A stretch of 64,000 bases of DNA from contig JANJGN010000150.1 of the NCBI GenBank assembly GCA_026770705.1, positions 310,001 to 374,000 of the forward strand, read 5' to 3'. The DNA is from Isurus oxyrinchus (Eukaryota). Made by a program: the position numbers and the translations under genes. This document shows positions 25,595 through 56,576 of the stretch, one piece after another; position 1 is the first letter of the stretch, and each line of letters opens with the position of its first letter. The notes beneath the pieces are model-generated. The model saw nothing but the letters and a program-made list of their open reading frames with translations, was not told the DNA's origin and searched no databases.

Positions 25595-25625
25595 TATTAC
25601 CCTGTAACCCGGCTTCACGTTTCTG
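25595..25625 (+). pseudogene. Remnant of the unit B V exon after a ~350-bp deletion
   Basis: Flanks match 13160-13419 and 13768-14060; the acceptor and nearly all of the V domain are gone. Confidence 0.9.
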
Positions 25626-28934: not shown

Positions 28935-29074
28935 ACAGTGGAGGAGAGATTCTGCACGTGATCCTGATCCTGGGAATACGAGCTGTGATATTCCTTGTGG
29001 CTGTGGTTATCACTATCGCTGGAGTCTGTGTCTGGGAGAGACAAACAGTGAAAGCAAGTCGACAGACTGTTTGA
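28935..29074 (+). CDS. Activating-type TM exon with intramembrane Arg and short tail
   Basis: ttctctag/ phase 1: SGGEILHVILILGIRAVIFLVAVVITIAGVCVWERQTVKASRQTV*; Arg codon 28979-28981; possible GC donor AAA/gcaagt after 29053. Confidence 0.82.
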
Positions 29075-29812
29075 AGCTTTGTACAGCAACAATCTGGTCA
29101 GTCAGTGCGGACAAATAACGTGTGATGTTGGGTTAAGTTGTAATGAAACTGGTCAGTGTCCTGGTTAGAATCACCTTCGTATCAGAGAGGCATTCCAGCA
29201 CAGTGGGAGCCCATTCAGCCCATTGAGTCCATGCTGTCTCTCTGTAGAGCAATACAGTCAGTCCCATTTCCCCCGCTCTATCCCCGTATCCCTGCAAGTT
29301 TATTTCCCCTCAAGTGTCCAACCAATTTCCTTTTGAAATCGTTCGTCTCCGCTTCCACCATCCTCGTAGGCAGCGAGTTCCAGCTCATTACCACTCGCTG
29401 TGTAAAAAAGTTACTCCTCACATCCCCCCTCTGCCCAAAACCTTCAATCTGTGTCCCCCAGTCCTTGTCCCATCAGCTAATGGCAACAGCTTCTCTTTGT
29501 CTGCCTTATCTAAACCCATCATCATCTTGTACACCTCGATCAGATCCCCCCTCAATCTCCTTTGCTCCAAGGAGAACAACCCCAGCTTCTCCAACCCAAC
29601 CTTGTAGCTAAAATCCCTCATCCCTGGACCCATTCTGTTCAATCTCCTCCCCACCCTCTCAAGGACCCTCACTTCCTTCCCAAACTGAGGAGACCAGAAC
29701 TGGACACAATACTCTAGTTGTCACCTAAACAGAGCTTTATAAATGTTCAGCATAACCTCCCTGTGTTTGTACTCAATCCCTCGATTTATGAAAAGCTTAT
29801 TCTTTCCATCAG

Positions 29813-29863
29813 CACAAACAGCAATTTCCAAGCGGACTCCCATCAGCAGACAGAGTGCAATGA
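29813..29863 (+). CDS. Possible terminal exon of unit B (HKQQFPSGLPSADRVQ*), followed by the family 3'UTR
   Basis: ttctttccatcag acceptor; downstream sequence homologous to the 3'UTRs at ~810 and ~56600; AATAAA near 30150. Confidence 0.45.
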   Translation, partial: HKQQFPSGLPSADRVQ

Positions 29864-30499
29864 AACATCGGCATGCCTGCTTCTTAATGTACGGAGAGAA
29901 ACCTGGAACGAGAGATTCTCCTTCTTCTCCTCAGCAAGCTGAAACTTTTCCTTATACCTGGTGCTCCCCAGTCCTGCTGTGTGGACACATCATAACCACG
30001 GCATTGTCTGGCTGTGTGCAGCCAACATGGTCGAATAGGAATGAACAGAAATGTGACATTGCTAAACTCTGTTCTCTGATTGGAATGTGCTTTCTGAATG
30101 CTGCACCTTTTTCATGCTGCGATAGATTGTAAGAAGCATTTGTGTTATGAATAAAATTACATTGATTAACACAAGTGATTAAAATGCTCAGGCTGTTCTG
30201 TAGATATTTAAAGATTAAAATTCTTGTTTTGCTGCAAAATACTTGGCTCAAAGACATTACTTCATATTGTCATGTTTTCCAATCAGATGAATTCCTCTGT
30301 CCATCTTTATAATAGAAATTTCCAATGTAAACATGTCACATTGTAGCTGCACACACTTGCCAGTGGCTGGTGTGATATCAAAGCTGTCTTGCTGTCGAGA
30401 AACAGCGAGAAATATTCCTGTTGTGTGCATGAACTTCATGTTAGCATGAGACACAGGCATCAGATACAATTTTGTGCAATTTGTACAATGTTCTTTAGA

Positions 30500-31050
30500 C
30501 AGCGGAGCACTCCCTCAGTACTGACCCTCCAACAGTGCTGCACTCCCTCAGTTCAGACCCTCCTACAGTGCAGCACTCCCTCAGATCAGACCCTCCGACA
30601 ATGCAGCACTCCCTCAGTTCAAACCCTCCGACAGTGCAGCACTCCCTCAGTTCAGACCCTCCGACTTTGCAGCACTCCCTCAGTTCAAACCCTCAGACAG
30701 TGCAGCACTCCCTCAGTTCAGAACCTCCGACAGTGCAGCACTCTCTCAGTTCAGACCCTCCGACAGTGCAGCCCTCCCTCATTTCAGACCCTCCGACAGT
30801 GCAGCACTCCCTCAGTTCAGGCCTCCGACAGTGCAGCACTCCTTCAGTTCAGACCCTCCGACAGTGCAGCACTCCCTCAGTTCAAACCATCCGACAGTGC
30901 AGCACTCCCTCAGTTCAAACCCTCCGACAGTGCAGCTCTCCCTCAGTTCAGAGCCTCCGACAGTGCAGCACTCCCTCAGTTCAGACCCTCCGACAGTGCA
31001 GCACTCCCTCAGTACTGAACCTCCGACAGTGCCGCACTACCTCAGTACTT
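30500..31050 (+). repeat. 31-bp satellite array
   Basis: cagcactccctcagttcagaccctccgacagtg units. Confidence 0.95.
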
Positions 31051-32544
31051 CTCTGCCGATGCTGCCAGACCTGCTGAGTTTTTCCAGGTATTTCTGTTTC
31101 TGTTTCTGTTTTGGATTTCCAGCATCTGCAGTTTTTTTGCTTTTAGTGCTGGGCAGTTCCTCAGCAAGGATTCGGGCCACAAAACATTGCGAGTGCTGTG
31201 GATCTGCGCCACGATTTAGAGAGCTGTGCTTGGCATGCCTATTCTAGTCCCAGTCCAGTGTGGTGGGGACAGCCTGGCAGTCCTGGGTTGGTGGTGCCCA
31301 GCATGGTGTGAGTGACGTGGTCAGTCCCTCACACACGTCCATCCTGGGGGTGGGTGGCTTGATACTAGGCCGCAGGTGGCACAATCCCAGTCAGGGGAGG
31401 CATCTGCAGCCTGTCAGTGGGGAGCAGGTAATATAGAGAGTAGGGGTGGGGGTGGGAATCGAGGGGGGCCGGTGGTCTCTGTAAGTCACAGTACAATGGG
31501 CCTCTAGTTGGAGAGAGGTCAGGTCTACATGGGGCATTGGGATGTCAACATCAGACAGTCTAGGGAGGAGGACTGGGATGTCAACCCCGAACACAATAAG
31601 ATCAAGGATTAGAGAGGAAGGGAGGAGACTGATTGGAAGGAGGGGAATGTGCACATTATGCTCCTCCAGCACGATGGGAGGGACTGTGATGGTTACGGGG
31701 GTGGGGGGGGTGAAGTGGGAGGGGATAGACGCTTACCTGGTGGTATTGCCTCAGCCTCACCCTTTTTCAAGCTGATCCAATGTCGCAGTTGAAGAATAAG
31801 CTACAAAACAAATTGGCAGGGGAGGTCTCCCAGGGCCTGTGGGAGACATCACCCACTGCATCTTTGGCCTGTTTGAAGGGGCACCCGAACAATTCCGGCT
31901 TTTCCAAATGATGAGGAAGACACAGCTGCACCCCGAGTCCCCTACTGGGGATCCAGAAGGTTGCAATAGCGCTGCGAGGGACTCATGGGCTCCACAGTGA
32001 CTCCCTAATTAGCGACTGGAAGGTTTATGTTCATTTATCTTTATTATCCGTTCATATTGAGCAATGGAGCTCCTGATCTGACACCTTTCTGTACCTCGTC
32101 CAATGCTTCTGTTATCAGGACTTCCACATCGATGTGAAAGAGCCATGATGATAGCAGACAGTCGCACAATGGGAATGGCACTAGGCCAGTGATCCAGAGG
32201 CCCAGGTGAATGCTTTGGAGGTACGGGTTCAAATCCCACCACGGCAGCTGGAGGAATTTAGATTCGATTAATCAATAAATTTAATTGATTGATACATTTT
32301 TTTCTTATTCATTTCAGGGATGTTGGTGTCGCTGACTAGGCCAGTATTTGTTGCCCATCCCCATTTGCCTTTGAGAACATATGGATATCTGAGTTAGGAT
32401 CAGGAGTAGGTCACTCAGTCCCTCGAACCTGCTCCGCCATTCAGTAAGATCATGGCTGATCTGATTGTCACCTCAACCTCACATTCCTGCCTACCCCCAA
32501 TGACCTTTCACCCCATTGTTAATCAAGAATCTATCTAGCTCTGT

Positions 32545-34500
32545 GGAAGGGGAGCCAATCAATCGGGCTGCTTTGTCCTGGATGGTGTCAAGCTTCTTGA
32601 GTGTTGTTGGAGCTGCACTCATCCAGGCATGTGGAGAGTATTCCATCACACTCCTGACTTGTGCGTTGTAGATGGTGGACAGGATTTGGGGAGTCAGGAG
32701 GTGAGTTACTGTCTGCAGGGTTCCCAGCCTCTGACCTGCTCTTGCAGCCACAGTGTTTACATGGCTGGTCCAGTTCAGTTTCTGCTCAATGGTAACTCCC
32801 AGGATGTTGATATTGGGGGATTCAGTGATGGTAATGCCATTGAATGCCAAGGGGCGATGGTTATGAATGGTCTGTGGGATATTCTGGTACAAAATGTCAA
32901 CACTCGGACTCCAGATGCAATATTCAAGTGGTTCCTTTATTAGGCATGTGGGGAGCAAACGCTGAGCAGTCCAGGCGCTTCTCCACCGAAGTTCAAATGA
33001 GCACAGTTTATATATTTTTTACTCTCAGTTACAAGGTAATGGTATTAGTTAGACAAAGGCCACAGCACAATGACCCTCCGGTGGGCTGATAATTGTGTTC
33101 TTGTACAGTAATTACAGGGCAGAGACTGGCTATTGTCCTTTTGAGACAGCAAAGAATCTATGTTTGTTCGATACAAAAGGTTTCCGGAGGCTGACTGGAT
33201 GTGGTTCAAGGCCATCGGACGGTGTGAAATAACCTTCCCCAATTCTTGATTGAGTCACCCTGTGTCCTTGTGTGTGTGTCTCCCATTTCCTCATTGCAAA
33301 TTTCCAGCTGAGCCCTCTGTACAGGTTTTTAGCTTTCACGTAAGGATGTGATTGTCTGTGTACGCTTTGTCACCCTAGCTGCTGGTCCTGGCTGGCTCTT
33401 TAAAATAAATCCAAATTTTCTGCGCCTTCAGTTAGATTCTCTCTTGTTGGAGTGGGCATTGCCTGGCACTTGTGTGGCATGAATGTTACTTGTCACCTGT
33501 CAGCCCAAGCCTGGATGTTGTCCAGGTCTTGCTGCATTTGGACATAACTTGCTTCAGTATCTGAGGAGCCATGAATGATGCTGAACATTGTGCAAACATC
33601 AGCAAACATCCCCACTTCTGACCTTATGATGGAAGGAAGGTCATTGATGAAGCAGTTGAAGATGTTTGAGCCTAGGACACTACCCTGAGTAACTCCTGCA
33701 GTGATGTCCTGGAACTGAGATGATTGACCCCCAATAATCACAACCATCGTCCTTTGTGCTGGGTATGACTCCAAGCAGCGGAGAGTTTTCCCCCGATTCC
33801 CATTGACTCCAGTTTTGCTCGGGCTCCTTGTTTTGCCACACTCAGTCAAATGCTGCCTTGATGTCAAGGGCAGTCACTCTCACCTCACCTCTGGAGTTCA
33901 GCTCATTTGTGCATGTTTGAACCAAGGCTGTAATGAGGCCAGGAGCTGAATGATCCTGGTGGAACACAAACTGAGCGTCAGTGAGCAGGTTCTTGGTAAG
34001 CACGTGCTGCTTGCAAGCGCTGTTGATGACCCCTTCCATCACTTTAGTAATGATCAAGAATAGACTGCTGGGGAATTGGCTGGGTTGGATTTGTCCTGCT
34101 TTTTGTGTACAGGACGTACCCCATAGCCGGGTAGTTGCCAGTGTTGCAGCTGTACTAGAAAATTCCAGAAAAGCTTGGCTAGGGGCGCAGCAAGTTCTGG
34201 AGCACAAGTCTTCAGTACTATTGCCGGAATAATGTCAGGGTCTGGAGCATTTGCAATATCCAGTGCCTTCAGCCCTTTCTTGATGTCACGTGGAATTAAT
34301 CGAATTGGCTAAAGATTGGCATCTCTGATGCTGGGGACCTCAGGAGGAGGCCGAGATGGATCAGCCACTCAGCACTTCTGGCTGAAGATTGTTGCGCATG
34401 CTTCAGTCTTGTCTTTTGCACCGATGTGCTGGGCTCCTCCATCATTGAGGATGGGGATATTTGTGGAGACTCCTCCTCCAGTGAGTTGTTTAATTGTCCA
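32545..34500 (-). mobile_element. CR1/L2-clade LINE RT fragments (32545-32850 and 33450-34500)
   Basis: GVTQGSVLG..FINDLP..MFADVCT and LGVTIEQKLNWTSHVN motifs. Confidence 0.85.
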
Positions 34501-36916
34501 CGACTGGATGTGACATCTGGAATGCGAAGCTAGTCTCAGTAATGGTGACCATGAAACTAACGCCAATTGTTGCAAAAACCCATCTGGGTCACTAATGCCC
34601 TTTGGGGAAGGAAACCTGCCGTCCTTACCCATTCTGGCCTACGTGTGACTCCTGACCCACAGCAATGTGGTTGACTCTTAACTGGCCCCTGAAATGGCCG
34701 AGCAAGCCACTGAGTTATATCAAAACCCGCCACAGACCAGTCAAACCAGATGAACTGCAGCACTTCGAAAAGGCAGCTCAGCAGCCCCTTCTCCAGGGCT
34801 CAGTCAGGAACAGGTAACAAACGTTGTCCACATCCCGTGAAAGAATTTTGGTAAAAAGGTAGCCGTGTATCACCACCCACGGCCAGCGCCAACCCCCCCA
34901 CCCCTACCTGATTGCACCAGTTTCAGATTACACCAGGTCAATGAACGGATAGAAACTCAAACCAATGAGATGAGCACAGAGAAGGATCAAGCCAGAGAGA
35001 GTTGGTGGGAAGAATTGGGAAAGCAACAAAAAAGGCAGAGCGGACACTAACACTATAACAAAGTAAAGACCAGAGGAGGAAGGAAGCAAGTGCGAAGAGG
35101 AATTGAGAGTAGAGCTGGTAGGCTGCTTGTCAAAGCCAAGGAACATCCATAGGTCACACCCACAGTGCTTTTGGGGAGGGTGATACATGATTTTGACCCA
35201 GGATCATCAAGTTTTGCACTGGCAGAGCCGTTAAAGAAAAGGGACCTTCACTACCCGTGTCCCCCGCCCAACAAAACTGTTGACATGCTGAGTCCACCTG
35301 TACAGGTAACCTCCAGACAGTTGACTACAAAGGCCATTGCAGCTGCTGAATATGACTTCCAGTTTCAAAACCTTCATGAATACAAGGATGGGGGATTCAG
35401 CAGGAATATTCCTGCACATCCTGTGGCAGATCCTGTAAATAAAAGGGACCTTCACTCACTCCTCAAAGCTGCTGACCTGCTGATTCACATCTACAGGCAA
35501 CCTCCAAATAGTCAACTAAAGAAGACAACGCAGCTGCTGAATGTGACTCCTAGTTTTAAACCCTTCACTCTGGAAAGAAGGAATCCAGTGCAATGGCCTC
35601 AGTATGATTCTTCACAGAAACTGATTTTAAATCTCATGTCTAAGTATTATTTTTCCTTTGCTTACATTTTAATCCTTGCACCTGATGGCTTTATCGCTTC
35701 AACTTAAATAACTTTCAGCAGGAGCCAGGTTCAAATGGAATGGACAAGCAGGCTTGGGAGGCCAAAAGGCCTACTCCTGCTTCTGTTTATTTATGTTGGT
35801 GTTGTTATGTAGTGGAACTAGAGAGGTTATAGCAGTTATGAGAACATTAAGCAAACAGCAGCAAGAATTGAACACCTACGTTGTGGTTTATGAAAAGGTT
35901 TTCAACCTGGTCAATTGGTAAAATCTGTTGAAAGTGGGCTATCATGGCGTGTGCCCTTTGTGAGATATTTGTAACAACGTTCTCGATGTCGGAACAGCTT
36001 GCATTGAACAAAGCTGATCTTTACCCAGAACTTCAGAGGAAGGGGGGACAATTGTTCCCTGGTGTGGGGGGCATGGTGGGGGGGGGAGGGTGAGGGAGAG
36101 ACAAGTAGCCTGAAATATCAAGCCAGACACTTTGTGAAGACAAAAGTTGTTTATTCATTTTTTTTCACAAATCATAATCTTTACAATTAAAGTCCCGACA
36201 AGATAATGGTGAATCATGAACACATTGTCGGGGTGAATCTGTGCCCGGGAGCATAAAGCAGCAAAATCAGGAACCCGCTTTACATCTCTCTGAATTTTAA
36301 CTATCATTAACCCCAGTAACATCCATTCAAATGACTTAGTCATAAGATTCCTCACACATTCACTTGCACACTCACACACCCACACCCACACAGACACACT
36401 GACACACTCACTCATTCACATTGACACACACTGACACAGTCACACACACACACACACACACACACGCTGACACAATCACACACATTCACATTGACACGCA
36501 CTGACAGTCACACATACACACACACACGCTGACACAATCACACACATTCACATTGACACACACATATTGACAGTCACACACACACGCTCATAAAGACAGA
36601 CACAAACACAGTCACGTGAGGTGAATAGTGTCGATGTATTTAAGGGGAAGCTGGATAAACACACGAGGGAGAAATGAATAGAAGGATATGGTGATGGGGT
36701 GAGATGGAGAAGGGGTGGGCGGAGACTCGTGTGGAGCAGAAACTCCAGCATGGAACAGATGGGCCGAATGGCTTCTTTCCCTGCTGTAAAACGCAGGTAA
36801 AGTTTCAGTTGGAATTAATGAACAGGGCCTGTGTTAAATAGATTGCTAAGCAGTAGATAAGGAGGGGAGAGGCTGTGGCATGGTGCAGGATGACCTTGCG
36901 TGAATGAGGCCAGGGT

Positions 36917-37033
36917 CTAATATCTACAGCAGAGACCACAAGTCTCATTTGGTTCTCTCCAATTACAGCAGTTACAGCAGAATCTGCAGAGCTGCTGTCT
37001 GCCCATTCTCTTCTGGCGCTGCAGCAAGGAGCC
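36917..37033 (-). CDS. HAMP: Hepcidin exon 3 (RQKR site and mature peptide)
   Basis: cctcctgcttttccag/GGC TCC TTG CTG CAG CGC CAG AAG AGA ... TGC TGT AGA TAT TAG. Confidence 0.95.
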   Translation of the reverse strand, partial: GSLLQRQKRMGRQQLCRFCCNCCNWREPNETCGLCCRY

Positions 37034-42664: not shown

Positions 42665-42750
42665 CTGGGAGCTTCCCATCTCTGCCTGTCTCTTCTGATC
42701 TTCTGGCTCTGCTTTGATGCTTTGGTTTGTAACTAGAGGAGCTTCCTGCT

Positions 42751-44290: not shown

Positions 44291-45327
44291 TCCTCCAGTG
44301 AAACATTTCAGAGCAGCTGAGCTTGGTTTTCTGGAACCAGTCTCGGCCCAGAAGACTAGGGCCCTCACCTGTCGCTATGATCACTGGAAGCTGGGCTGTC
44401 TGCTGCCTGTAGGACACAGGTACTGGGATGAGGTCCTTTCCCTGTATGGATTCTCCAGTGTGTGTCTTCAGCTGATCCACTGTTGGCTCTAAATTCAGCG
44501 TCTGGGTTCCTTCATTTAGCTGCTTAAATGTGGGCTCTTCCACCACTGTGTCTGAGGCTCCCGTATCTGCCCCATTACTAGTGGCTGCCCATTCACTTGG
44601 GTTGTGATGGTTATAGGTTCAGTTTTTACCACTGTGACATTGGACAGGGAATAGACATCGGTATCAGCAGCTTCAGGCACTGCCTGATGGGCTGTCTCGA
44701 TTACACCCTGCATTGCTTTATTACCCGCCCCTTTCTTGTGGCAGTGATGGCATTCTGCCCCCTTGAACCTGCAGGTGTCCGGTACGTGCTCACTCCCCCC
44801 CACATCGAGAACAGGCCAACTTCGGAGTTGCTGCTGAAATACTCCCACGAAGCCTTTTAGTTTCTGGAGCGGCAGAGACTGTCTCTTGCTTGGCGGCTGT
44901 CTCTCTCTCTCTCTCTCTCTCTCCAGTTTGAACCTCACGCCCGGTGATTGGTTCCTGTCCCAGCTGAGGACTGGTGCCATGTTGTACATCCCTTAAATCC
45001 CGCCAGTCTCTCCCAGCACTTTCCATGCCTGGCGCTATTTCCATGGTGCGCTTCAAATCGATGTCGGCTTCTGCGAGTAAATGGCTCTGAATGGCGTTGG
45101 GGTGAACGACACAAACCAATCGGCCCCGCAACATGTCATTGAGTGTGTCTCCGAGGTCCCAGTGCTCAGTCACCTGCTTCCACTTCACTGTATAGGTTGC
45201 GATGGACTCTCCCGGGGCCCTTACTCTGGAGTTAAACTTAAACCTTTTCATTATTACCCACGGCTTCAGCTGAAAACACATCTTCATGAGGTCGACTAAT
45301 TGGTGAAAAGATTTAGAATTGGGTGCA
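44290..45327 (-). mobile_element. Gypsy/Ty3 LTR retrotransposon gag-protease fragment, degraded
   Basis: RFKFNSRVRAPGESIATY..LNDMLRGRLVC (gag), CSRCGG/CHHCHKKG knuckles, GEGPSLLGRDW protease end. Confidence 0.88.
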
Positions 45328-45614
45328 ATACACGTCACTGTCTTCAGCTCTGAGACTGTCAATCCTCACCAAACAATTCTTCCCTTCCAAGTCGGCGATT
45401 ATTTTAGCACGTCCCACGAATGTGGCCACCCCATAATTGGGATCTTTGGTGTATGTGATGATATATTTCCATCTATACCAATATTTGTACCAAGCTCCGT
45501 GCAGTGCTGTGTAAGAGTGGGAAGGAAAGTCAAAGCTACACGGAATAACCACACAAGAGCTGCTGATGGCCCTCCGAGGTAGCGCCTTCATAGACCATCC
45601 CTCTGACGTCACTC
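45328..45614 (-). pseudogene. Siglec V-set exon (unit C), truncated by the Gypsy element just before the essential Arg
   Basis: ctttcag/ GVTSEGWSMKALPRRAISSSCVVIPCSFDFP..W..GRAKIIADLEGKNCLVRIDSLRAEDSDVY, then gag sequence. Confidence 0.88.
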
Positions 45615-45669
45615 CTGAAAGGCAACAAGGGAGGGGACTGAACATCAAAAAGCAGAATATTACTTCAAT

Positions 45670-46120
45670 GGAGAGAGGCAGCAGAATGCGGTACAGAGGG
45701 ATCTGGGTGTCCTTGTACATGAATCACAGAAAGTCAGCATTCAGGAACAGCACGGAATGAGGAAGGCAAGTGGAATGTTGGCCTTTATTGCAAAGGGATG
45801 GAGTATAAAAGGAGGGAAGTCTTGCTACAACTGTACAGGGCGTTGGTGAGATTGTATCAGGAGCAGTGTGTACAGTTCTGGTCTCCTTACTTAGGGAGGG
45901 ATAGACTCTGCATTGGAGGCAGTTCAGAGGAGGTTCACTGGGCTGATTCCTGGGATGAAGGGGGTTTGTCTTATGAGGAAATGTTGAGCAGGTTGGGCCC
46001 TGTATCCATTGGAGTTTAGAAGAATGAGAGGTGATCTTATTGAAACATATAAGATTCTGAGGTGGTGGGGGGTTTGACAGGGTCGATGCTGAGGGGATGT
46101 TACCCCTTGTGGGGGAATCC
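45670..46120 (+). mobile_element. CR1 LINE fragment
   Basis: EYKRREVLLQLYRALVR..CVQFWSPY. Confidence 0.85.
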
Positions 46121-46434
46121 TGTGAAGCAATAAGGACGTTTTACTGCATTAAAGGTGCTATATAAATGCACTGTCATTCCTATTGAAACAAGCTCTCTGA
46201 TGCACAAACAGAAAATGCTGGAAAAACTCAGCAGGTCTGACAGCATCTGTGGAGAGAGAAACAGAGTTGGTGTTTCGAGTCCATATGAGGCTTTTTCTTT
46301 TGCTAAATTCTCTGACTCGCTATTCACTCACTCTCTGTGTGATCACTAACCCTGTTCTCTAAAATTAAATGTTCACTTCCTCGCTCCAGGAAAGAATCCA
46401 ATTCCCTGAGTTCCGATCAGTAATGAATTTGTAC

Positions 46435-46480
46435 CTTGCAGCAAGCTGATGAAGATCAATATCAGACCGACCTCTCCCAT
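46435..46480 (-). CDS. Leader exon, unit C (MGEVGLILIFISLLQ)
   Basis: ttccatttag acceptor (exon starts 46494), phase-1 G/gtacaa donor, in frame with 45614. Confidence 0.8.
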
Positions 46481-46749
46481 CTTCAGTTCCTCATCTAAAT
46501 GGAAATGATAAAGACAGAGACTTTTTCAGAAATTGTCCCCAGCGTTTCTTCCTCAAACAACAACTTGTGTTTAAATGGCACCTTTCAGAAAATTAAACAG
46601 CCCCAGGGAATTATCTAATGTCAAGACAAGGAAGGAGAGATTGAGAAGGGACATCGCAAACCGATTCACCAAACACGGCAAAAATTCATTGTTCCCTCAC
46701 TCCCTGTGCTGGGTGTCCAGCTTTTTCTCTCAGTGAGTTTAGTCCTCAC

Positions 46750-49620
46750 AATCTCTCTCTATCGCACTCTTCTGCTCTCTCTCTCTCTCACACACACACA
46801 TTCTCTCTCTAACACTCACAATCTCTCTCTATCACACTCTTCTGCTCTATCTCTCTCTCTCACACACACACATTCTCTGTCTAACACTCACAATCTCTCT
46901 CTATCGCACTCCTCTGCACGATCTCTCTCTCACACACACACATTCTCTCTCTAACACTCACAATCTCTCTCTATCAACTCTTCTGCTCTATCTCTCTCTC
47001 TCTCTCTCTCACACACATTCTCTCTCTAACACTCACAATCTCTCTCTATCACACTCTTCTGCTCTATCTCTCTCTCTCTCACACACACACATTCTCTCTC
47101 TAACAAACACAATCTCTCTCTATCGCACTCTTCTGCTCTCTCTCTCTCTCACACACACACACATTCTCTCTCTAACACTCACAATCTCTCTCTATCACAC
47201 TCTTCTGCTCTCTCTCTCTCTCTCACACATACATTCTCTCTCTTATACTCACAAAATTTTTCTCTGTCACACTCTTCTGCTCTATCTCTCTGTCACACAC
47301 ACACATTCTCTCTCTAACACTCACAATCTCTCTCTATCACACTCCTCTGCTCTATCTCTCTCTCACACACACATTCTCTCTCTAACACTCACAATCTCTC
47401 TCTATCGCACTCTTCTGCTCTATCTCTCTCTCTCAAACACACTCATTCTCTCTCTAACACTCACAATCTCTCTCTATCGCACTCTTCTGCTCTATCTCTC
47501 TCTCTCACACACACACACATTCTCTCTCTAACAAACACAATCTCTCTCTATCACACTCTTCTGCTCTATCTCTCTCTCTCTCACACACACATTCTCTCTC
47601 TAACAATCACAATCTCTCTATCACACTCTTCTGCTCTATCTCTCTCTCACACACACACATTCTCTCTCTAACACTCACAATCTCTCTCTATCGCACTCTT
47701 CTGCTCTATCTCTCTCTCTCACACACACACATTCTCTGTCTAACACTCACAATCTCTCTCTATCGCACTCCTCTGCTCGATCTCTCTCTCACACACACAC
47801 ATTCTCTCTCTAACACTCACAATCTCTCTCTATCAACTCTTCTGCTCTATCTCTCTCTCTCTCTCTCTCTCACACACATTCTCTCTCTAACACTCACAAT
47901 CTCTCTCTATCACACTCTTCTGCTCTATCTCTCTCTCTCTCACACACACATTCTCTCTCTAACACTCACAATCTCTCTCTATCACACTCTTCTGCTCTAT
48001 CTCTCTCTCGCACACACACACATTCTCTCTCTAACAAACACAATCTCTCTCTATCGCACTCTTCTGCTCTCTCTCTCTCTCACACACACACACATTCTCT
48101 CTCTAACACTCACAATCTCTCTCTATCGCACTCTTCTGCTCTATCTCTCTCTCTCACACACACACATTCTCTGTCTAACACTCACAATCTCTCTCTATCG
48201 CACTCCTCTGCTCGATCTCTCTCTCACACACACACATTCTCTCTCTAACACTCACAATCTCTCTCTATCACACTCTTCTGCTCTATCTCTCTCTCTCACA
48301 CACATATTCTCTGTCTAACACTCACAATCTCTCTCTATCACACTCTTCTGCTCTATCTCTCTCTCACACACACACCCACATTCTCTCTCTAACACTCACA
48401 ATCTCTCTCTATCACACTCTTCTGCTCTATCTCTCTCTCACGCACACACATTCTCTCTCAGACACTCACATTCTCTCTCTCTCACACACACACATTCTCT
48501 CTCTCTCAGACACTCACATTCTCTCTCTCTCAAACATTTACCATCTCTCTCTATCTTTCTCTTCTGCTGTCTCCCTCTTTCTCACTCTCATGCACTCTCT
48601 CCCNNNNNNNNNNNNNNNNNNNNNNNNNNNNNNNNNNNNNNNNNNNNNNNNNNNNNNNNNNNNNNNNNNNNNNNNNNNNNNNNNNNNNNNNNNNNNNNNN
48701 NNNNNNNNNNNNNNNNNNNNNNNNNNNNNNNNNNNNNNNNNNNNNNNNNNNNNNNNNNNNNNNNNNNNNNNNNNNNNNNNNNNNNNNNNNNNNNNNNNNN
48801 NNNNNNNNNNNNNNNNNNNNNNCTCCCTCACACCACACCCTCCCTCACACACACACGCACTCTCNNNNNNNNNNNNNNNNNNNNNNNNNNNNNNNNNNNN
48901 NNNNNNNNNNNNNNNNNNNNNNNNNNNNNNNNNNNNNNNNNNNNNNNNNNNNNNNNNNNNNNNNNNNNNNNNNNNNNNNNNNNNNNNNNNNNNNNNNNNN
49001 NNNNNNNNNNNNNNNNNNNNNNNNNNNNNNNNNNNNNNNNNCTCCCTCACACACACACACTCTCCCTCACACACACACACTCTCTCCCTCACACACAGAA
49101 TCTCTCTCACACACACACACTCTCCCTCACACACACATCCTCCCTCACACACACACACACTCTCTCTGATACGCACAATCTCTCCCTCACACACACACAC
49201 TCTCCCTCACAGACACACACACTCTCTCTGATACGCACAATCTCTCCCTCACACACACAGAATCTCTCTCACACACACACACTCTCCCTCACACACACAT
49301 CCTCCCTCACACACACACACACTCTCTCTGATACGCACAATCTCTCCCTCACACACACACACAATCTCCCTCACACACACAGAATCTCTCTCACACACAC
49401 ACTCTCTCCCNNNNNNNNNNNNNNNNNNNNNNNNNNNNNNNNNNNNNNNNNNNNNNNNNNNNNNNNNNNNNNNNNNNNNNNNNNNNNNNNNNNNNNNNNN
49501 NNNNNNNNNNNNNNNNNNNNNNNNNNNNNNNNNNNNNNGTACACACTCTTTCTAACTCTTTTTCTCTCTCACAGACTCTCTCTGTCTCTCTCTGTCTCTC
49601 TCTCTCTCAGACACACTCTC
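46750..49620. repeat. Compound (CT)n/(CA)n ~60-bp satellite with N gaps
   Basis: cattctctctctaacactcacaatctctctctatcacactcttctgctc units. Confidence 0.95.
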
Positions 49621-50097
49621 TCTAATACGGAAGATTGTGGTTTTAAGACGTGCTCATGATTTCTGCTCAAAACCCAGGCAGATTCTCCCCAGTGAGGGAG
49701 TACTGAGGGTGTGCTGCACTGTCAGAGGGTCAGTACTGAGGGAGTGCTGCACTGTTGGAGGGTTAGCACTGAGGGAGTGCTGCACTTCCAGAGGGTCAAT
49801 ACTGAAGGAGTGCTGCACTCTCAAAGCGTCAATGCTGAGGGAGTGCTGCACTGTCAGAGGGTGGACACTGAGGGAATGCTGCTCTGTCAGACCTGCCATA
49901 TTTCAGATGATGTTTGAAATTAGCAACATGCCTCATGTATAATTATATATCATCAACTCAAAATAAATAGATTATTCCTGTACATTTCACTTTACTGTAA
50001 ATTGTTTGCAGTTTCATTTCCTTAGAAACCAGGCTTGTGTGATCACTATTTTTAAATAACGTTAATAATAAAGATGCGACAATCCACATGCACAGAT

Positions 50098-50135
<38 letters not shown>

Positions 50136-50838
50136 ATGTGTAGGCACATACATGCACATTTACACACAGTCATACACGTGCAAAAACCTACACAGAAACA
50201 TACACACACTCAACTCACACACACACACTCACACGTGCACACACATACACATACACATGTACACACATTCACTTATGCACAGAAATATACACAAAGACAC
50301 ACGCACATTTGCGCAAACACATACACACATGCACACACAGACACATGCATGCATACTCACACAAACATACTCACATATGTAGAAACACAAACACATACAC
50401 ATAAACACGCGTGAGGTCCCTCTTCTCTCTCAGGGCTACACTGGAGTCTCGGTGTCAGCTCCGATTCTGTGTTGAAGGAAGGTAAACTCCAGATCAACAA
50501 GACCCTGAACTGGATGAGCAACCTCCTGAACAGAGAATTGTAGATTTACCCCTCAGTGCTCCATCGATCAAATACAATTCATTCCCGTAAATCCCTTGGC
50601 AAAATCCTGAGGATGTGAAAGTTTCTTTCATTCTAGGTGAACAGCACCTCTACTGGTGGGAGAATGTAACTGTAGTTTGACTGTTTACATAGGCAGTGTC
50701 CATTATAAATTTGACAGTGGAAGTTATATGGAGGGAAGGTATCTGGAAATGCATACAGACATCAGATACAGAGAGATGATGCATGGAGTCTTGCTGTGCA
50801 CGCTGCTTGCTCACATTAAACACTTGATTTGTTCTTAG

Positions 50839-51120
50839 ATGCTCCACAGAATCTCACATTTACTTCTCTTGAAATGATTAATGCTTCATTGATCAATATA
50901 ATTGAGGGGAATTCTGCAGTGATAATCTGCTCTGTCGAGAGCTTCCCAGCTTCTAACCTGACGTGGCGACATCTTAATGTCCCAATGAACAGAACAAGTT
51001 GCAACAATGAGCTGTGGTTGGTGATTCCTCACGTTACATCCAGGGACACTGGAGACTATCAGTGTGTGGCAGAGAATGAACATGGAGCAGTGGAGGGATT
51101 CATCACCATCACTGTGGAAT
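50839..51120 (+). CDS. C2 Ig exon D1
   Basis: APQNLTFTSLEM..EGNSAVIICSVESFPASNLTWRH..DTGDYQCVAENEHG; 282 nt, phase 1-1. Confidence 0.88.
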
Positions 51121-51876
51121 GTGAGTGTACACAGACTTCAACATCTCTCACACACACACTCACACATGCAAAAACACTCATGTGTAGACACAAACATGCA
51201 CGCTTACACACAAACATACGTTCAAACACATACACAGAAACACACACAAACTCAACTCACACATACAAACATTCATGCGCACACAAAGACACACACATGC
51301 ACACACACTCCCTCAAGCACAGACATACAGACATACACACACAGACACACACACACACACACACACACACACGCGTCCACACATGTGCTGACAGACACGC
51401 GCATACACACAAATACAAACTCACGTGCAGAAGTACACACACAAGTGTGAGCTCCCTCTCCTCTCTCAGTTCTGTACTGGAGTCTTGGTATCAGCTCCCA
51501 TTCTGTGCTGAAGGAAGGTAAACTCCAGATCAGCAAGACCCTGAATTGGATGAGCAACCTCCTGAACAGAGAAATGTAGATTTAGCTCTCAGTGCTCCAT
51601 CGATCAAATACAATTCATTGCCTATCAAGCCCTTGGGGACATCTTGAGAGTGTTAAAGGATGTTTCTTTCATTCTAGAGGGTTAGCAACTCTACTGGTGG
51701 GAGGAAGCAACTGCAGTGTGACAGTTTACATAGGAAGTGTCCATTATAAATATGACAGTAATTTTTCATGAGGGAAGGTACCTGGAAAAGCATTCCAACA
51801 TCAGATACAGAGAGATGATGCATGGAGTCTTGCTGTGCACTATGCTTGCTCACATTAAAATCTTTATTTCTTTTAG

Positions 51877-52157
51877 ACGCCCCCAGAATCTCTCAATTAA
51901 TTCTCTTGATATGATTAACGCTTCATCGATCAATATAATTGAGGGGAATTCTGCAGTGATAATCTGCTCTGTCGAGAGCTTCCCAGCTTCTAACCTGACG
52001 TGGCGACATCTTAATGTCCCAATGAACAGAACAAGTTGCAACAATGAGCTGTGGTTGGTGTTTCCTCACGTTACATCCAGGGACACTGGAGACTATCAGT
52101 GTGTGGCAGAGAATGAACATGGAGCAGTGGAGGTGTCCATAACCATCACTGCGGAAC
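51877..52157 (+). pseudogene. C2 Ig exon D2 with a 1-nt deletion
   Basis: 281 nt versus 282; ACGCCCCCAGAAT is one base shorter than ATGCTCCACAGAAT in D1. Confidence 0.75.
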
Positions 52158-52982
52158 GTGAGTTGNNNNNNNNNNNNNNNNNNNNNNNNNNNNNNNNNNN
52201 NNNNNNNNNNNNNNNNNNNNNNNNNNNNNNNNNNNNNNNNNNNNNNNNNNNNNNNNNNNNNNNNNNNNNNNNNNNNNNNNNNNNNNNNNNNNNNNNNNNN
52301 NNNNNNACACATGCATAATTATCCACACACAGTCATACACATACAAGCATATACACAGGAAAATACACACCCTTCTCAAACACACACACACATTCATGCC
52401 CACACATAGACACACACATGCACATACTCTCACTCATGGACAGACCTAGACACACAGACACATGCGCATGCGCACACACAGACACATGTGTGCATACACA
52501 CACAAACACACTCACATGTGCAGAAACACAAACACACAGATACACACACGTGAGTTCCCTCTCCTCTCTCAGTGCCGCACTGGAGTCTTGGTATCAGCTC
52601 CGATTCTGTGTTGAAAGAAGGTAAACTCCAGATCAACAAGACCCTGAATTGGATGAGCAACCTCCTGAACAGAGAATTGTAGATTTACCCCTCAGTGCTC
52701 CATCAATCAAATACAATTCATTGCCTGTCCAGCCCTTTGCGAAATCCTGAGGATGTGAAAGCAAGCTTCTTTCATTCTAGATGGACAACACCTCTACTGG
52801 TGGGAGAATGCAACTGCAGTGTGACAGTTTACATAGGCAGTGTCCATTAAAAATGTGGCATAAGACGTTATTCTGAGGGAAGTTACCTGGAAATGCATTT
52901 AGACATCAGATACAGAGAGATGATGCATGGAGTCTTGCTGTGCAATAGGTTTGCTCACATTAAACACTTGATTTGTTTTTAG

Positions 52983-53264
52983 ATGCACCACAGGATCTCT
53001 CATTTACTTCGCTTAATATGATTTACGCTTCATCAATCAATATAATTGAGGGGAATTCTGCAGTGATAATCTGCTCTGTCGAGAGCTTCCCAGCTTCTAA
53101 CCTGACGTGGCGACATCTTAATGTCCCAATGAACAGAACAAGTTCCAACAATGAGCTGTGGTTGGTGATTCCTCACGTTACATCCAGGGACACTGGAGAC
53201 TATCAGTGTGTGGCAGAGAATGAACATGGAGCAGTGGAGGGGTTCATAACCATCACTGTGGAAT
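52983..53264 (+). CDS. C2 Ig exon D3
   Basis: 282 nt, phase 1-1, open. Confidence 0.88.
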
Positions 53265-54074
53265 GTGAGTGTGGAGATACATTTGTTTGTTTGTTGTCTC
53301 CGTGGTCTCCGTGGAGCCATTGGGATCGTGTTGTTTTTAATCCAGTTTTCTTCAATCCTCGCTCAGTCCACGTTATCCACACATCCAATTTTTCCTCTCC
53401 CTTTCTGTTTTTGCTCTCAGTTTCTCCTTCAATGGTTGTGAGGACAAGGCTGTCAGGTCTTCGTTTCCAATCTCCATACTTGACGACCTTTCGCTCTCTA
53501 ACTGTCCTGAACAACCCTTTTAATTGCTGAACTTCTCATTCTTTAATTGATAAATATTATATATAAATGTTACATGTTGAAATGCAACTATTGTATTCAT
53601 AAATTGCTTAGAAATTACTAAACATTCAACAGCCAGTGAAGCATTATCGAAGTGAGCTCACTGTTGTAATGTAGGAAACACAGGTACTGATTTGTGCACA
53701 GCAAGATCCCGCAAACCACCGTGTGATAATGACCTGATAGTCGATTATTTCAGTGAGGTTGGTTGCTACATGTGTAGAGACTACATACCCTTTAGGGAGG
53801 GAAGCATGTCTCGATGTGGATGTGACTCCAGTCTCAGACACCAACATGGTTAACTCACACCTGCCCTCTGAACTGGTCTCCCAGTTTGGGACAAACCAGT
53901 GGTTCAGGAGGAAGACCCCCCACCACCTTCTCAAGGGGAAACTAGGGATGGACAATAAATGTCAGCATTGCCCGAGAATGAGTATTTAAACACTGAGTGA
54001 GTGTATCGCTTCTCGAGATACATCGGAGCATCATTGTAAACCTGTAGTGCAGTAATTAATGGCTGTTTTTACAG

Positions 54075-54171
54075 GTAGAGACTCCAGTAAATGGACAGTA
54101 GGATTGTTCACGACTGGGATCATGTTGAGTGTTTTCCTGGCTGGAATCTTCATCTTCATCTGTGTGAGAAA
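54075..54171 (+). CDS. Neutral TM exon, unit D
   Basis: RDSSKWTVGLFTTGIMLSVFLAGIFIFICVRK; tttttacag/ and /gtaagt. Confidence 0.88.
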
Positions 54172-54206
54172 GTAAGTGTGAAGATTTAACTTGATTTTAA
54201 TATAAA

Positions 54207-54705
54207 CATTTGCTTCAATGTTCTTTCCTTAAGTCGGTGATTGTTTCCCTTGGGATCAGCACCAGGTCCCTCTCTGTAAGTGATCCCTGTGTCCACTCTG
54301 ATCCGGAGAGAACCTTTCATTGTCCTGTATCCAGGTAAACAATCACGAGACCCAGAGATTCCTCACTCTGCACGATTACTCCGGGATAAATATTTGCTTC
54401 AATGTTCTTTCCTTAAGTCGGTGATTGTTTCCCTTGGGATCAGCACCAGGTCCCTCTCCGTAACTGGTCCCTGTGTCCACTATGATCCGGAGAGAACCTT
54501 TCATTGTCCTGTATCCAGTAAACAATCACGAGTCCCAGAGATTCCTCACTCTGCACGATTACTCCTGGATAAATATTTGCTTCAATGTTCTTTCCTGAAG
54601 TCGGTGATTGTTTCCCTTGTGTTAAGCGCTACATGCCTCTCCGTAACTGGTCTCTTTTGTCCCTTACGATCCAGACAGTGTTTTTCATTGCCCGTTATCC
54701 AGATG
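54207..54705 (+). repeat. ~185-bp tandem duplication, ~2.6 copies
   Basis: atttgcttcaatgttctttcct..aagtcggtgattg recurs at ~54207, 54392, 54576. Confidence 0.85.
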
Positions 54706-55231
54706 AATAATAATCAGTTGCTGTGATCTGGAAGGTGCTGCCTGAAAGGGTGCTGGAAGCAGATTTAATAGGATCTTTCAAAAGGGGAATTGGTTAATAC
54801 TTGAAGGGGGAACATTTGAAGGGCTATGGGGGGAAGAGCAGGGGTGGAGGGAGGGTCAAAGATATGGCGTGTCATTATAATGATATTATACCTTAGGCTT
54901 ATTTATTGTACAAGAAACAAAGCACCAATCGCTCACAGGGATTGGGTGAGAATGTTAATGATTTGTTTATCAAGACTCGGCACGAGTACAGTTATACATA
55001 TGGAGAAAGATTGAAGGCATCAGAGCTGTGAGTGTGTGTTCTGCTCAAAGCAAAAGTCAAACTGAGATTGGATCACATGACACACTTCCATTATAGTGAT
55101 GTCACGCTGATACCCCTTATTGGAACTAGAGACAGTCCAGTCGTTGGTGTAAGGTTACACTGGGCTCTGTGTCTGTGCTGCACTGACTCTCTGCTATATG
55201 ATAACCACAGTTTGATATTGTGTTATTGCAG

Positions 55232-55313
55232 GAGAAAGACAGCGATGGAGGAGAGAGTTTCAGGGACCAGTGACATTGCATTGACCCCCAGTCCACTCTC
55301 TGTGAAGCACCAG
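55232..55313 (+). CDS. Cytoplasmic exon 1, unit D
   Basis: ttgcag/ phase 2-0: RKTAMEERVSGTSDIALTPSPLSVKHQ /gtacag. Confidence 0.78.
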
Positions 55314-56327
55314 GTACAGGAGCTGTTTACACTCACTCCAAAGCTTCTATCTCAGTGTGTAGACAACACATGTCCCAGATTCCCAGCCAGGTTACCCACA
55401 GATATCTACCTGTGGAGTCAGATATGGCTCAGTAGGTAGCATTGTCTCTCGCTCCCTCCCCCTCTTCCCTCCATCACTCGCTCTTTGACCAGAAACCTGA
55501 ACGCAATAATGACAAGGCACCTGATGTCAGTAGTGAGGGAGTGCTGCACTGTCCTAGGGTCTGTGCTGAGGGAGTGCTGGAGTGTCAGAAGGTCAGTACT
55601 GAGGGAGTGTTGCACTGTCAGAGGGTCTGTACTGAGGGAGAGCTAGACTGTCAGAGGGTCAGTACTGAGGGAGTGCTGCGCTGTCATAGGGTCAGTACTG
55701 AGGGAGTGCTGGACTGTCGGACGGTCAGTACTGAGGGAGTGCTGCACTGTCGGAGGGTCAGTACTGAGGGAGTGCTGCACTGTCGGATGGTCAGTACTGA
55801 GGACAGTACTGAGTGAGTGCTGCACTGTCAAAGAGTCCATTTTCAAGGGGTGCTGCCTCTTGAAGGGGCAGTTCCGAGGGAGTGCTGCACTGTCAGCAGA
55901 GAGCACTGAGAGAATATTGCAGTGTTCGAGGTGCCTCTTTCAGAATAGCTGTATAATGCTGACCATGTTTACCATCTTATCTGGTCCCATGGCCACATTT
56001 CCAACACTGTAGCAGTGTCGCCCTTCAATAAAATTCCTTCATTGGCGTGAGGTTCTTTGTGTGTCTGTGTTTGTGAATAATGGGGCACAAATCTCATGAT
56101 TGGGATGGTAACATCGGACTTCAAGACTCAGGTCTGCGATAGCGAGAGAGATTACATGATAAATAGAGAGAGAAAGCAAGAGAGAGAGAGAGAGACAGAG
56201 AAAGAGAGTGAAAAAGAGGGTTAAACCCATTGAGACATGACTGACAGTAACGAGGCTGCAGAATAACTTAACCCTATCAGTGCCAGTAAATGATGTGAGG
56301 ATGTCTTCTGTTTCTATTTCTCTGTAG

Positions 56328-56576
56328 GGTAAACAGAACGTGCTGATTACTGAGCCCCGGAACACAACCAGAGACACAACAAGTGAGGGGGAGACCCCAG
56401 CTCCCCGGGATCTCTCTGAAGGTCCAGTGGGAGGCGATGTTGGACATGGGAACCCCGACAAACCCGACGAGCTTTTCTACGCCAACATCAACTTTTCAAA
56501 GCTGCCCGGCGGTGACAGGACTGTGCACAGGAGCGAGGACACGGAATACGCACAGATCAGGTTCCAGAAAAACTGA
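56328..56576 (+). CDS. Terminal cytoplasmic exon with ITIM (LFYANI) and ITSM-like (TEYAQI) motifs, unit D
   Basis: ctctgtag/GKQNVLITEPR...DELFYANINFSK...DTEYAQIRFQKN*. Confidence 0.9.
   Translation, partial: GKQNVLITEPRNTTRDTTSEGETPAPRDLSEGPVGGDVGHGNPDKPDELFYANINFSKLPGGDRTVHRSEDTEYAQIRFQKN

What the first reader, a model, noticed from the sequence alone, without database searches (positions are those of the whole stretch)
28935..56576. Paired activating and inhibitory Siglec-like receptors
Seen: one TM exon has an Arg within the hydrophobic span (ILILGIRAVIFL) and a short tail with no Tyr motif. Another is neutral and leads to ITIM+ITSM. The C2 exons preceding each are nearly identical (27104-27256 versus 50839/52983). 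Known: a charged TM recruits DAP12/FcRgamma, as in Siglec-14/-16 and LILRA, and such pairs are homogenised by gene conversion. Inference: an independent paired-Siglec system in a cartilaginous fish.
Basis: partly seen in the sequence, partly recalled or inferred. Interest (0 to 1): 0.8.

Follow-up and report, generated by a model that had tools for sequence, protein, structure and literature searches.

The report
Shark Siglec activating exon, damaged local copy
The arginine-bearing membrane exon is a real, conserved shark receptor exon seen spliced to an Ig exon in RNA data, but its local gene has lost the sugar-binding exon as assembled, and this is not a tidy pair.

Summary
Partly right. The exon at 28935-29074 is real. 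It has an AG acceptor in phase 1, encodes DSGGEILHVILILGIRAVIFLVAVVITIAGVCVWERQTVKASRQTV* and has no Tyr. It is conserved in 9 shark proteins (best E 5e-13). In contigs of three probable RNA runs it is joined GT..AG to the C2-set exon at 26485-26781.

The piece at 27104-27256 is only the 3' half of a C2 exon. It has no acceptor and those joints skip it.

As assembled, this activating-type unit has lost 348 bp of its V-set exon, acceptor included. Locally it can give only a V-less product, unless it borrows the V exon at 13430 or the assembly is wrong.

The inhibitory end is also real: neutral TM 54075-54171, exon 55232-55313, tail 56328-56576 with LFYANI and TEYAQI. Three tandem C2 exons precede it, and the middle one is frame-broken. 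Its leader, V and first C2 exons are not found between 42.7 and 50.8 kb, where three N gaps lie in satellites.

Great white shark annotation joins similar V+C2 ectodomains (88-91% identical) to either ending, so the on/off design exists in sharks. I found no paper on it.

This scan had already noted such shark Siglec pairs on several other pieces of this genome. Interest is low to moderate. The adaptor is unknown.

The parts
24329..24413 (+). Upstream exon 'X' of the leader cassette. The cassette is repeated 6 times in the window: 4 copies at 4.4-10.3 kb and 2 at 22.2-24.9 kb.
   Evidence: AG..GT borders. Joint 24413>24825 in contigs of X5 and X7. The same peptide appears as a cytoplasmic stretch in P0025 and P0023.
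24824..24903 (+). Leader exon encoding MIGKSYFLLSLLQ, with phase 1 out.
   Evidence: The same leader begins great white shark P0013, P0025, P0056 and P0057.
25595..25625 (+). Remnant of the V-set exon: its last ~30 nt plus an intact GT donor. The other 348 bp, including the acceptor AG, are deleted relative to the copy at 13430-13798.
   Evidence: Alignment and coordinates. Joint 25624>26484 (GT..AG) in X1, X5 and X7; this joint may come from paralogs.
26485..26781 (+). C2-set exon (C2-1') that is spliced to the Arg-TM exon. It is intact, in phase 1-1 and 99 codons long.
   Evidence: Pfam C2-set_2, E 1.4e-8. It differs at 5 of 297 nt from 14199-14495. It is 99% identical to P0056 and 98% to P0012. 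Joint 26779>28933, GT..AG (cut +2), in X1, X5 and X7 and in 0 contigs of X17.
27104..27256 (+). Dead 3' half of a C2 (Ig_3/I-set) exon. It has no acceptor and the joints skip it.
   Evidence: Pfam matches only profile positions 51-90 of I-set. The joint bypasses it.
28935..29074 (+). Terminal exon: a TM helix with one Arg, then a 13-residue Tyr-free tail and a stop.
   Evidence: phmmer found 10 hits at E<=1e-3, of which 9 hold ILGIRA and 8 of those 9 have it at the C-terminus. It is 93.5% identical to P0012 and 89% to P0015. Contig depth on the exon is 170-180 in X5 and X7, against 0-7 in the intron bin before it.
50839..51120 (+). C2 (Ig_3/I-set) exon, tandem copy 1. Intact, 282 nt, phase 1-1.
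   Evidence: Pfam Ig_3, E 2.9e-11.
51877..52157 (+). C2 exon, tandem copy 2. It is 281 nt, one base short in a C-run near its 5' end, so it is out of frame as assembled. Its donor is read and the N gap starts 8 nt later.
52983..53264 (+). C2 exon, tandem copy 3. Intact.
   Evidence: Pfam Ig_3, E 1.2e-12.
54075..54171 (+). Neutral TM exon, phase 1>2.
   Evidence: It is 82% identical to P0024.
55232..55313 (+). Cytoplasmic exon, phase 2>0.
   Evidence: It matches RKTATQERVSGTSDIALTPSPLSV of P0024.
56328..56576 (+). Tail exon with LFYANI (ITIM pattern) and TEYAQI (ITSM pattern), then a stop.
   Evidence: It is 82% identical to the tail of P0024.
13430..13798 (+). Intact Siglec-type V-set exon of the upstream gene A. 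It is the only intact V exon found on the + strand.
   Evidence: Pfam V-set 1.8e-9 and Ig_CD22 5.3e-8. The best 18 of 28 PDB matches are all Siglec-family chains, and YFFRIE aligns with yffrve of Siglec-5.
19707..19988 (+). Gene A copy of the C2 exon, with an in-frame TGA at 19835-19837 where the other copies have CGA.
21253..21349 (+). Gene A neutral TM exon of a second type.
   Evidence: It is 96.7% identical to P0025.
48604..49538 (.). Three N gaps inside satellite arrays, upstream of the inhibitory unit's first exon.

Best explanation
The window is part of a lamniform-shark cluster of CD33-like Siglec genes built from interchangeable exons: leader, V-set, C2-1, further C2 exons, and one of several membrane/tail modules.

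The exon at 28935 is the 'arginine TM, no tail' module. Its transcript form is C2-1 exon > TM-Arg exon, and in complete relatives it is leader > V > C2-1 > TM-Arg. By inference, the buried Arg pairs with the Asp of a dimeric ITAM adaptor, so ligand binding activates the cell. The sequence does not say which adaptor.

The local copy is a mosaic remnant. It has leader exons, a V exon cut down to 30 nt, an intact C2-1 exon, a half C2 exon and an intact TM-Arg exon. As assembled, it can make only a V-less, one-Ig-domain, Arg-TM protein that lacks the canonical sialic-acid site.

The second unit is the 3' part of an inhibitory gene: C2 exons, a neutral TM and an ITIM plus ITSM tail. By inference it recruits SHP-type phosphatases. 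Its 5' exons are not in the assembled sequence.

Shown: exon borders, phases, conservation, the splice joints in contigs, and the deletions. Inferred: adaptor pairing, signalling direction, and that the contigs come from this copy rather than a paralog.
For: Exon anatomy and phases.

Conservation of the TM-Arg exon: 10 hits at E<=1e-3 among 1.84 billion representatives, and 9 of them are shark Ig receptors with ILGIRA. Flanking residues are invariant in 15 of 15 sequences, though those sequences were chosen by that motif.

Architecture V + C2-1 + TM-Arg is annotated in Carcharodon (P0015, P0011, P0012) and in Scyliorhinus (P0001, P0014, P0016).

Joints 26779>28933 and 25624>26484, both GT..AG, are seen in X1, X5 and X7 and in 0 contigs of the large run X17. 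The exon is covered at 170-180 against 0-7 in the intron before it in X5 and X7.

The X5 contig on 26484-26752 has 1 other letter in 269. An X1 contig on 25834-26127 (2 other letters in 294) covers DNA that is present in this copy and absent from gene A.

Inhibitory relatives P0021 and P0024 have V + C2-1 ectodomains 88-91% identical to those of the Arg-TM proteins.

V-less models exist in the great white shark: P0056 and P0057.
Against: I laid contigs at 90% likeness. The runs are only guessed to be RNA, and the sides of the joints are 21-30 letters long. The last 26 nt of the C2-1 exon are identical in both local copies. So the joints may come from gene A's C2-1 exon or from paralogs elsewhere.

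The X5 contig on the TM-Arg exon carries an extra T after 29077 that the X17 contig lacks, so more than one such locus or allele is expressed.

No contig listed joins the leader directly to 26485. No annotated V-less Arg-TM protein was found among proteins of 54-171 aa; the only hit was P0057.

Contigs of X17 that match up to 25593 run on into a V-exon start of the P0015 type. So an intact V behind the same flank exists in at least one copy in organism B, and the deletion could be individual-specific or an assembly fault.
Confidence: 0.7

Rival explanations
1. One reading: two complete neighbouring genes, one activating and one inhibitory, whose ectodomain exons are kept nearly identical by gene conversion.
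For: Both signalling ends are real. The piece at 27104 is 97% identical to the exons at 50.8 and 53.0 kb, but only 93.75% to the nearer copy at 19.8 kb. That could be a short conversion patch.
Against: The piece is half an exon without an acceptor and is skipped. The activating unit has no V exon. The inhibitory unit has no leader, V or C2-1 exon in 42.7-50.8 kb. The Ig exons actually used next to each TM are different domains: C2-set_2 versus Ig_3/I-set.
Confidence: 0.08
2. The local activating unit is a dead remnant. The spliced contigs come from intact paralogs elsewhere in the genome that are at least 90% alike, and nothing functional is made here.
For: There are two deletions that cut through exons. 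Neighbouring gene A carries a nonsense codon and the middle C2 copy a frameshift, so this part of the cluster is decaying. Likeness was set at 90 and many paralogs are laid. The scan notes similar exons on other pieces of the genome.
Against: The leader, C2-1' and TM-Arg exons keep open frames and AG/GT borders. Contigs on the TM-Arg exon differ from the window at 4 of 148 and 4 of 164 letters. That is much like the X17 contig at the same place, which differs at 8 of 364. An X1 contig covers a stretch specific to this copy.
Confidence: 0.3
3. Assembly artefact: the V deletion, the half exon and the missing 5' exons of the inhibitory unit arise from collapsed or mis-joined tandem duplicates.
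For: The region is full of near-identical duplicates and satellites, and 4 N gaps lie within the finding's range (8 in the whole window). X17 contigs continue from the same flank into an intact V start.
Against: The deletion junctions lie in read sequence with no N. V-less gene models exist in the great white shark annotation.
Confidence: 0.15
4. One long transcription unit: the upstream V and C2-1 exons (13.4-14.5 kb, or 24.8-26.8 kb) are joined either to the Arg-TM exon or, across the antisense hepcidin-like gene, to the C2 exons, neutral TM and ITIM tail.
For: All Ig exons and both TM exons start in phase 1, so either junction keeps the frame. No other 5' exons for the inhibitory end were found. 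P0057 joins leader > C2-1 > this kind of C2 exon.
Against: There is no joint or read for it. It needs an intron of more than 21 kb that holds another gene. The N gaps may simply hide the missing exons.
Confidence: 0.08

Closest known systems
Primate paired Siglecs (Siglec-5/Siglec-14 and Siglec-11/Siglec-16)
   Same: A Siglec-type ectodomain is wired either to ITIM-type motifs or to a short-tailed TM with a basic residue. The genes are linked in a cluster. The abstracts of PMC4042635 and PMC5701461 were seen in the listing.
   Different: Here the ectodomains of annotated shark partners are 88-91% identical, whereas the primate pairs are described in those abstracts as extremely similar. The local activating copy lacks V. 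The Arg-TM exon is a cassette shared with other shark Ig families. The adaptor is untested.
Annotated shark proteins: 'myeloid cell surface antigen CD33-like' P0015 and 'sialic acid-binding Ig-like lectin 12' P0011/P0012 (Carcharodon carcharias); 'sialic acid-binding Ig-like lectin 14 isoform X2' P0014 (Scyliorhinus canicula)
   Same: They have the same C2-1 exon (95-98%) and the same TM-Arg ending (89-93.5% in P0015 and P0012; the P0014 ending is truncated and was not scored against the window).
   Different: They have one or two V domains, and the local unit has none as assembled.
V-less great white shark models P0056 and P0057
   Same: The leader is joined directly to the C2-1 exon. P0056 is 99% identical to 26487-26780.
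   Different: P0056 ends in a neutral TM plus ITIM-type tail, and P0057 runs on into a C2 exon. Neither has the Arg TM.
Arg-TM Ig receptors that use FcR-gamma (macaque activating KIR)
   Same: An Arg in the TM and a short tail. Only the start of the abstract of PMC8102735 was seen.
   Different: The Ig family is unrelated, and no shark experiment exists. Akula et al. 2014 (PMC4016189, passages read) found no FcR-gamma in the shark data of that time.

Membership tests
Siglec (I-type lectin, CD33-like) | An N-terminal V-set domain with the conserved Arg of the sialic-acid site | tested here: not met
   For the activating unit, the V exon is reduced to 30 nt. For neighbouring gene A the feature is met: Pfam V-set/Ig_CD22, and YFFRIE aligns with Siglec-5 and Siglec-7.
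Siglec (I-type lectin, CD33-like) | A C2-set domain after V, of the type found in annotated Siglec relatives | tested here: met
   Pfam C2-set_2, E 1.4e-8. It is 95-99% identical to great white shark proteins that their source names Siglec or CD33-like.
Siglec (I-type lectin, CD33-like) | Binds sialic acid | not testable with these tools
   This needs a binding assay.
Inhibitory CD33-like Siglec | A membrane-proximal ITIM and a distal ITIM-like or ITSM motif in the tail | tested here: met
   LFYANI and TEYAQI lie in 56328-56576. The ITIM signature is quoted in PMC7226832.
Paired activating/inhibitory receptors | Two linked genes with near-identical ligand-binding domains | tested here: not met
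   In this window neither unit has its own V exon in the assembled sequence. In the great white shark annotation the partners are 88-91% identical.
Paired activating/inhibitory receptors | Opposite signalling ends: a basic TM residue with a short tail versus ITIM | tested here: met
Paired activating/inhibitory receptors | The activating partner associates with an ITAM adaptor | not testable with these tools
   This needs co-expression and co-IP.
Paired activating/inhibitory receptors | Homogenisation by gene conversion | tested here: inconclusive
   The C2-1 exons differ at 5 of 297 nt (2 silent) against about 7% in the flanks. The half exon is 97% identical to distant copies and 93.75% to the near copy. 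The ectodomain tree is unresolved, with 11 of 15 inner branches open.
Shark Arg-TM terminal-exon cassette | ILGIRAxIF...CV core, C-terminal position, short Tyr-free tail, phase-1 acceptor | tested here: met

The most novel reading that the evidence does not exclude
A single transcription unit makes both an activating (Arg-TM) and an inhibitory (ITIM/ITSM) receptor from shared 5' exons by choice of terminal exons. The inhibitory form would be spliced across an antisense hepcidin-like gene. If the V deletion is real, both forms would be V-less and blind to sialic acid.
Probability: 0.08. Interest if true: 0.7.

Novelty: new member of a known kind. Interest (0 to 1): 0.3.

Why it matters
Paired on/off Siglecs are described in mammals, and teleosts are reported to lack CD33-related Siglecs (PMC7226832, passages read). 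A conserved Arg-TM module on Siglec-type ectodomains in sharks would mean this regulatory design arose independently near the base of jawed vertebrates.

This window adds little to that point. Automatic annotation already holds the complete forms, and the scan has noted better examples on other pieces of this genome. What it does add is a view of how the cluster turns over. Deletions cut through exons. A half exon is left behind and skipped. A copy may survive without its lectin domain.

Tried and rejected
The 5' exons of the inhibitory unit. ORF listing and tblastn with shark proteins found no leader, V or C2-1 exon on the + strand in 42.7-50.8 kb. The only match there is a minus-strand V-like piece.

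A tyrosine tail for gene A. tblastn with the tails of P0025 and P0023 found only exon X and nothing further.

Pfam. It found no family for the TM-Arg exon or for the minus-strand V-like ORF.

Ectodomain tree. I used 18 rows. P0013 and P0028 were dropped for lack of the C2-1 start motif, and P0001 was kept with a short V. The tree is unresolved: the Arg-TM label needs 6 changes, and 394 of 500 shuffles do as well. It says nothing either way about homogenisation.

A V-less Arg-TM protein in public annotation. None was found among proteins of 54-171 aa, where 1 hit (P0057) came from 3 candidates.

The search of earlier findings by sequence was blank, which means nothing.

Literature. Searches, and passages, gave no paper on shark paired Siglecs. 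I did not ask for any supplement, as the task says they are closed. Supplementary file 9 of PMC8455134 and Table S2 of PMC13262535 may list shark Siglec families.

I rejected the idea that the half exon is used through the AG at about 27127. Only phase 2 would keep the frame, and the preceding exon ends in phase 1.


Full report
**Layout.** The window has eight N runs and many tandem and dispersed duplications. ORF listing, hydrophobicity scanning and tblastn show the following on the + strand.
- 2-151: the tail exon of an upstream gene.
- 4.4-10.3 kb: four copies of a cassette made of an exon 'X' and a leader exon.
- Gene A: V-set exon 13430-13798, C2-1 exon 14199-14495, two more C2 exons at about 18.1 and 18.9 kb, a C2 exon at 19707-19988 with an in-frame TGA, and a neutral TM exon at 21253-21349.
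- 22.2-24.9 kb: two more cassettes.
- 25.3-29.1 kb: a partial copy of gene A that ends in the Arg-TM exon.
- 50.8-56.6 kb, after the region other notes call a minus-strand hepcidin-like gene: three tandem C2 exons, a neutral TM exon, a cytoplasmic exon and a tail exon.

**The Arg-TM exon.** 28935-29074 follows a strong pyrimidine tract and AG and starts in phase 1, like every Ig exon here. It encodes (D)SGGEILHVILILGIRAVIFLVAVVITIAGVCVWERQTVKASRQTV and a stop. It holds the most hydrophobic 21-residue span on the + strand and no Tyr.

A phmmer search of 1.84 billion representatives gave 10 proteins at E<=1e-3.
- One, P0008, is a repetitive chance match.
- The other 9 are shark Ig receptors that hold ILGIRA. 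In 8 of these 9 it lies at the very C-terminus.
- Their sources name them CD33-like or Siglec in Scyliorhinus torazame, Chiloscyllium punctatum, C. plagiosum and Rhincodon typus.

Pfam shows the same ending on several kinds of protein: Siglec-type V plus C2-set_2 proteins, an eight-Ig protein, a single-V protein and a two-domain V/I-set protein. So it is a shared cassette. A ray protein, P0037, has a similar Arg-TM short tail.

**Closest relatives.** A word search with P0001 gave 55 proteins. The closest to the window are from Carcharodon carcharias.
- P0015 (V, C2-1, TM-Arg) and P0011/P0012 (two V, C2-1, TM-Arg) match the local C2-1' exon at 95-98%. P0012 and P0015 match the TM-Arg exon at 93.5% and 89%.
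- P0021 and P0024 join V and C2-1 to a neutral TM and a tail with TEYAQI.
- P0056 and P0057 go from the leader straight to C2-1, without V.

Activating-type and inhibitory-type ectodomains in that species are 88-91% identical over 167-193 aligned residues. I infer that the window comes from a lamniform shark, the great white or a close relative.

**RNA evidence.** Of the 22 runs listed, 15 are small contig sets guessed to be RNA, 1 is on record as RNA and 6 are large sets of unknown kind. I laid X1 (organism A), X5 and X7 (organism B, different studies) and the large run X17 on 24100-29700 at 90% likeness.

Two GT..AG joints are present in X1, X5 and X7 and in no contig of X17.
- 26779>28933 (cut +2) is the C2-1' exon end joined to the first base of the Arg-TM exon.
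- 25624>26484 (cut +1) is the V donor joined to the C2-1' acceptor.

In X5 and X7 the bin with the Arg-TM exon has depth 170-180, and the intron bin before it has 0-7.

Limits of this evidence:
- The contigs are short, with 21-30 letters on the shorter side of each joint.
- The last 26 nt of the two local C2-1 exons are identical.
- Paralogs at 90% or more are laid too. For example, an X1 loose end at 27104 shows a complete C2 exon from elsewhere, and the X5 contig has an extra T after 29077 that the X17 contig lacks.

In favour of the local copy:
- The X5 contig on 26484-26752 has 1 other letter in 269.
- An X1 contig (2 other letters in 294) lies on 25834-26127, a stretch absent from gene A.
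- The RNA contigs on the exon differ from the window about as much as the X17 contig does (4 of 148 and 4 of 164, against 8 of 364).

**Damage in the local activating unit.** Aligned with gene A, the copy lacks 13420-13767. That is the acceptor AG and all but the last 30 nt of the V exon. The one upstream AG that could serve gives a stop.

The piece at 27104-27256 starts in the middle of the C2 exon, has no acceptor, and matches only profile positions 51-90 of I-set. It is 97.3% and 97.5% identical to the copies at 50.8 and 53.0 kb and 93.75% to gene A's copy. It is a 182-nt patch with unrelated flanks.

Leader (phase 1 out), C2-1' (1-1) and TM-Arg (1 in) remain compatible. So a V-less product of the kind modelled in P0056 and P0057 is possible. 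No such Arg-TM protein is annotated among proteins of 54-171 aa, and no leader>C2-1' joint was among those listed.

X17 contigs that match up to 25593 continue into a V-exon start of the P0015 type. So an intact V behind this flank exists in at least one copy in organism B.

**The inhibitory unit.** TM 54075-54171, exon 55232-55313 and tail 56328-56576 are in consistent phase. They match P0024 at 82% in TM and tail. LFYANI fits the ITIM signature quoted in PMC7226832. TEYAQI fits TxYxx(V/I), an ITSM pattern that I recall and took from no call.

Of the three tandem C2 exons, the first and third are intact at 282 nt. The second is 281 nt and out of frame as assembled.

I found no leader, V or C2-1 exon for this unit. 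The three gaps at 48.6-49.5 kb lie in satellites and may hide them. The fourth gap is intronic.

**Is it a Siglec?** Gene A's V exon matches Pfam V-set and Ig_CD22. The best 18 of its 28 PDB matches are all Siglec-family chains (Siglec-5, -7, -8 and -10, CD33, sialoadhesin, MAG, Siglec-15). YFFRIE aligns with the corresponding Arg motif of Siglec-5 and Siglec-7. That this Arg is the sialic-acid contact is recalled knowledge. The activating unit itself fails this feature as assembled.

**Mechanism.** A basic TM residue plus a short tail is the standard mark of receptors that need an ITAM adaptor. PMC7226832 states this for Siglec-14, -15 and -16 with DAP proteins. The abstract start of PMC8102735 states it for Arg-TM KIR with FcR-gamma.

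Which shark chain is used is unknown. Akula et al. 2014 found no FcR-gamma in shark data. A note of this scan reports an FcR-gamma gene in this genome, which I did not test.

**Novelty.** I found no paper on shark paired Siglecs. Two sources that I read only in passages do not mention sharks.

Public automatic annotation already holds the complete forms. This scan has reported such clusters on at least eight other stretches of this genome: one search listed 8 of the 422 notes that fit the word Siglec. This window is a degraded instance.

Noticed in passing
window 19835-19837: Gene A's fourth C2 exon has an in-frame TGA where the three downstream copies read CGA. After its TM exon only exon X follows, and the next exon gives a stop after four codons. 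Gene A may therefore be decaying, or may skip this exon.
   Followed up: partly
window 51877-52157: The middle tandem C2 exon is one base short in a run of C near its 5' end, so it is out of frame as assembled. An N gap starts 8 nt after its end.
   Followed up: partly
window 45316-45614, minus strand: A V-set-like ORF follows an AG and is about 30% identical to the V of P0015. It ends in a stop right after ...DSDVYCTQF, where relatives carry the Arg motif. It gave no Pfam hit at E<=1e-3. It is probably a dead V exon, on the strand of the hepcidin-like gene.
   Followed up: partly
window 4.4-10.3 kb and 22.2-24.9 kb: There are six copies of a cassette: exon X (...GSSTGRGHSAQAERVGSSSPGEQSDRSW) plus the leader exon. 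Contigs of X5 and X7 splice X to the leader exon, which suggests a 5' exon. Yet gene models P0025 and P0023 use the X peptide as a cytoplasmic stretch. The leader exon also has an upstream out-of-frame ATG (MKYLGVDND...) that some great white shark models use.
   Followed up: partly
window 2-151: The tail exon of an upstream gene, with FLYANP and TEYAQI. It is 86% identical to the tail of P0056.
   Followed up: no
window 16.0-16.7, 23.8-24.05, 30.5-31.05, 37.5-37.7, 39.9-40.2, 49.7-49.9, 55.5-55.8 and 63.5-63.8 kb: Arrays of one 33-bp satellite occur in both orientations throughout the cluster. They are possible substrates for the rearrangements seen.
   Followed up: no
protein P0037 (Hypanus sabinus): A ray Siglec-like protein ends in a TM with Arg (LISLAVRGVLFLL...) and a short tail. 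The design may therefore predate the split of sharks and rays.
   Followed up: no
window 36.9-42.7 kb: Other notes place a hepcidin-like gene inside this Siglec cluster. From memory, human HAMP lies next to MAG and CD22. If so, this cluster would sit at the old MAG/CD22 neighbourhood rather than at a CD33-type one.
   Followed up: no
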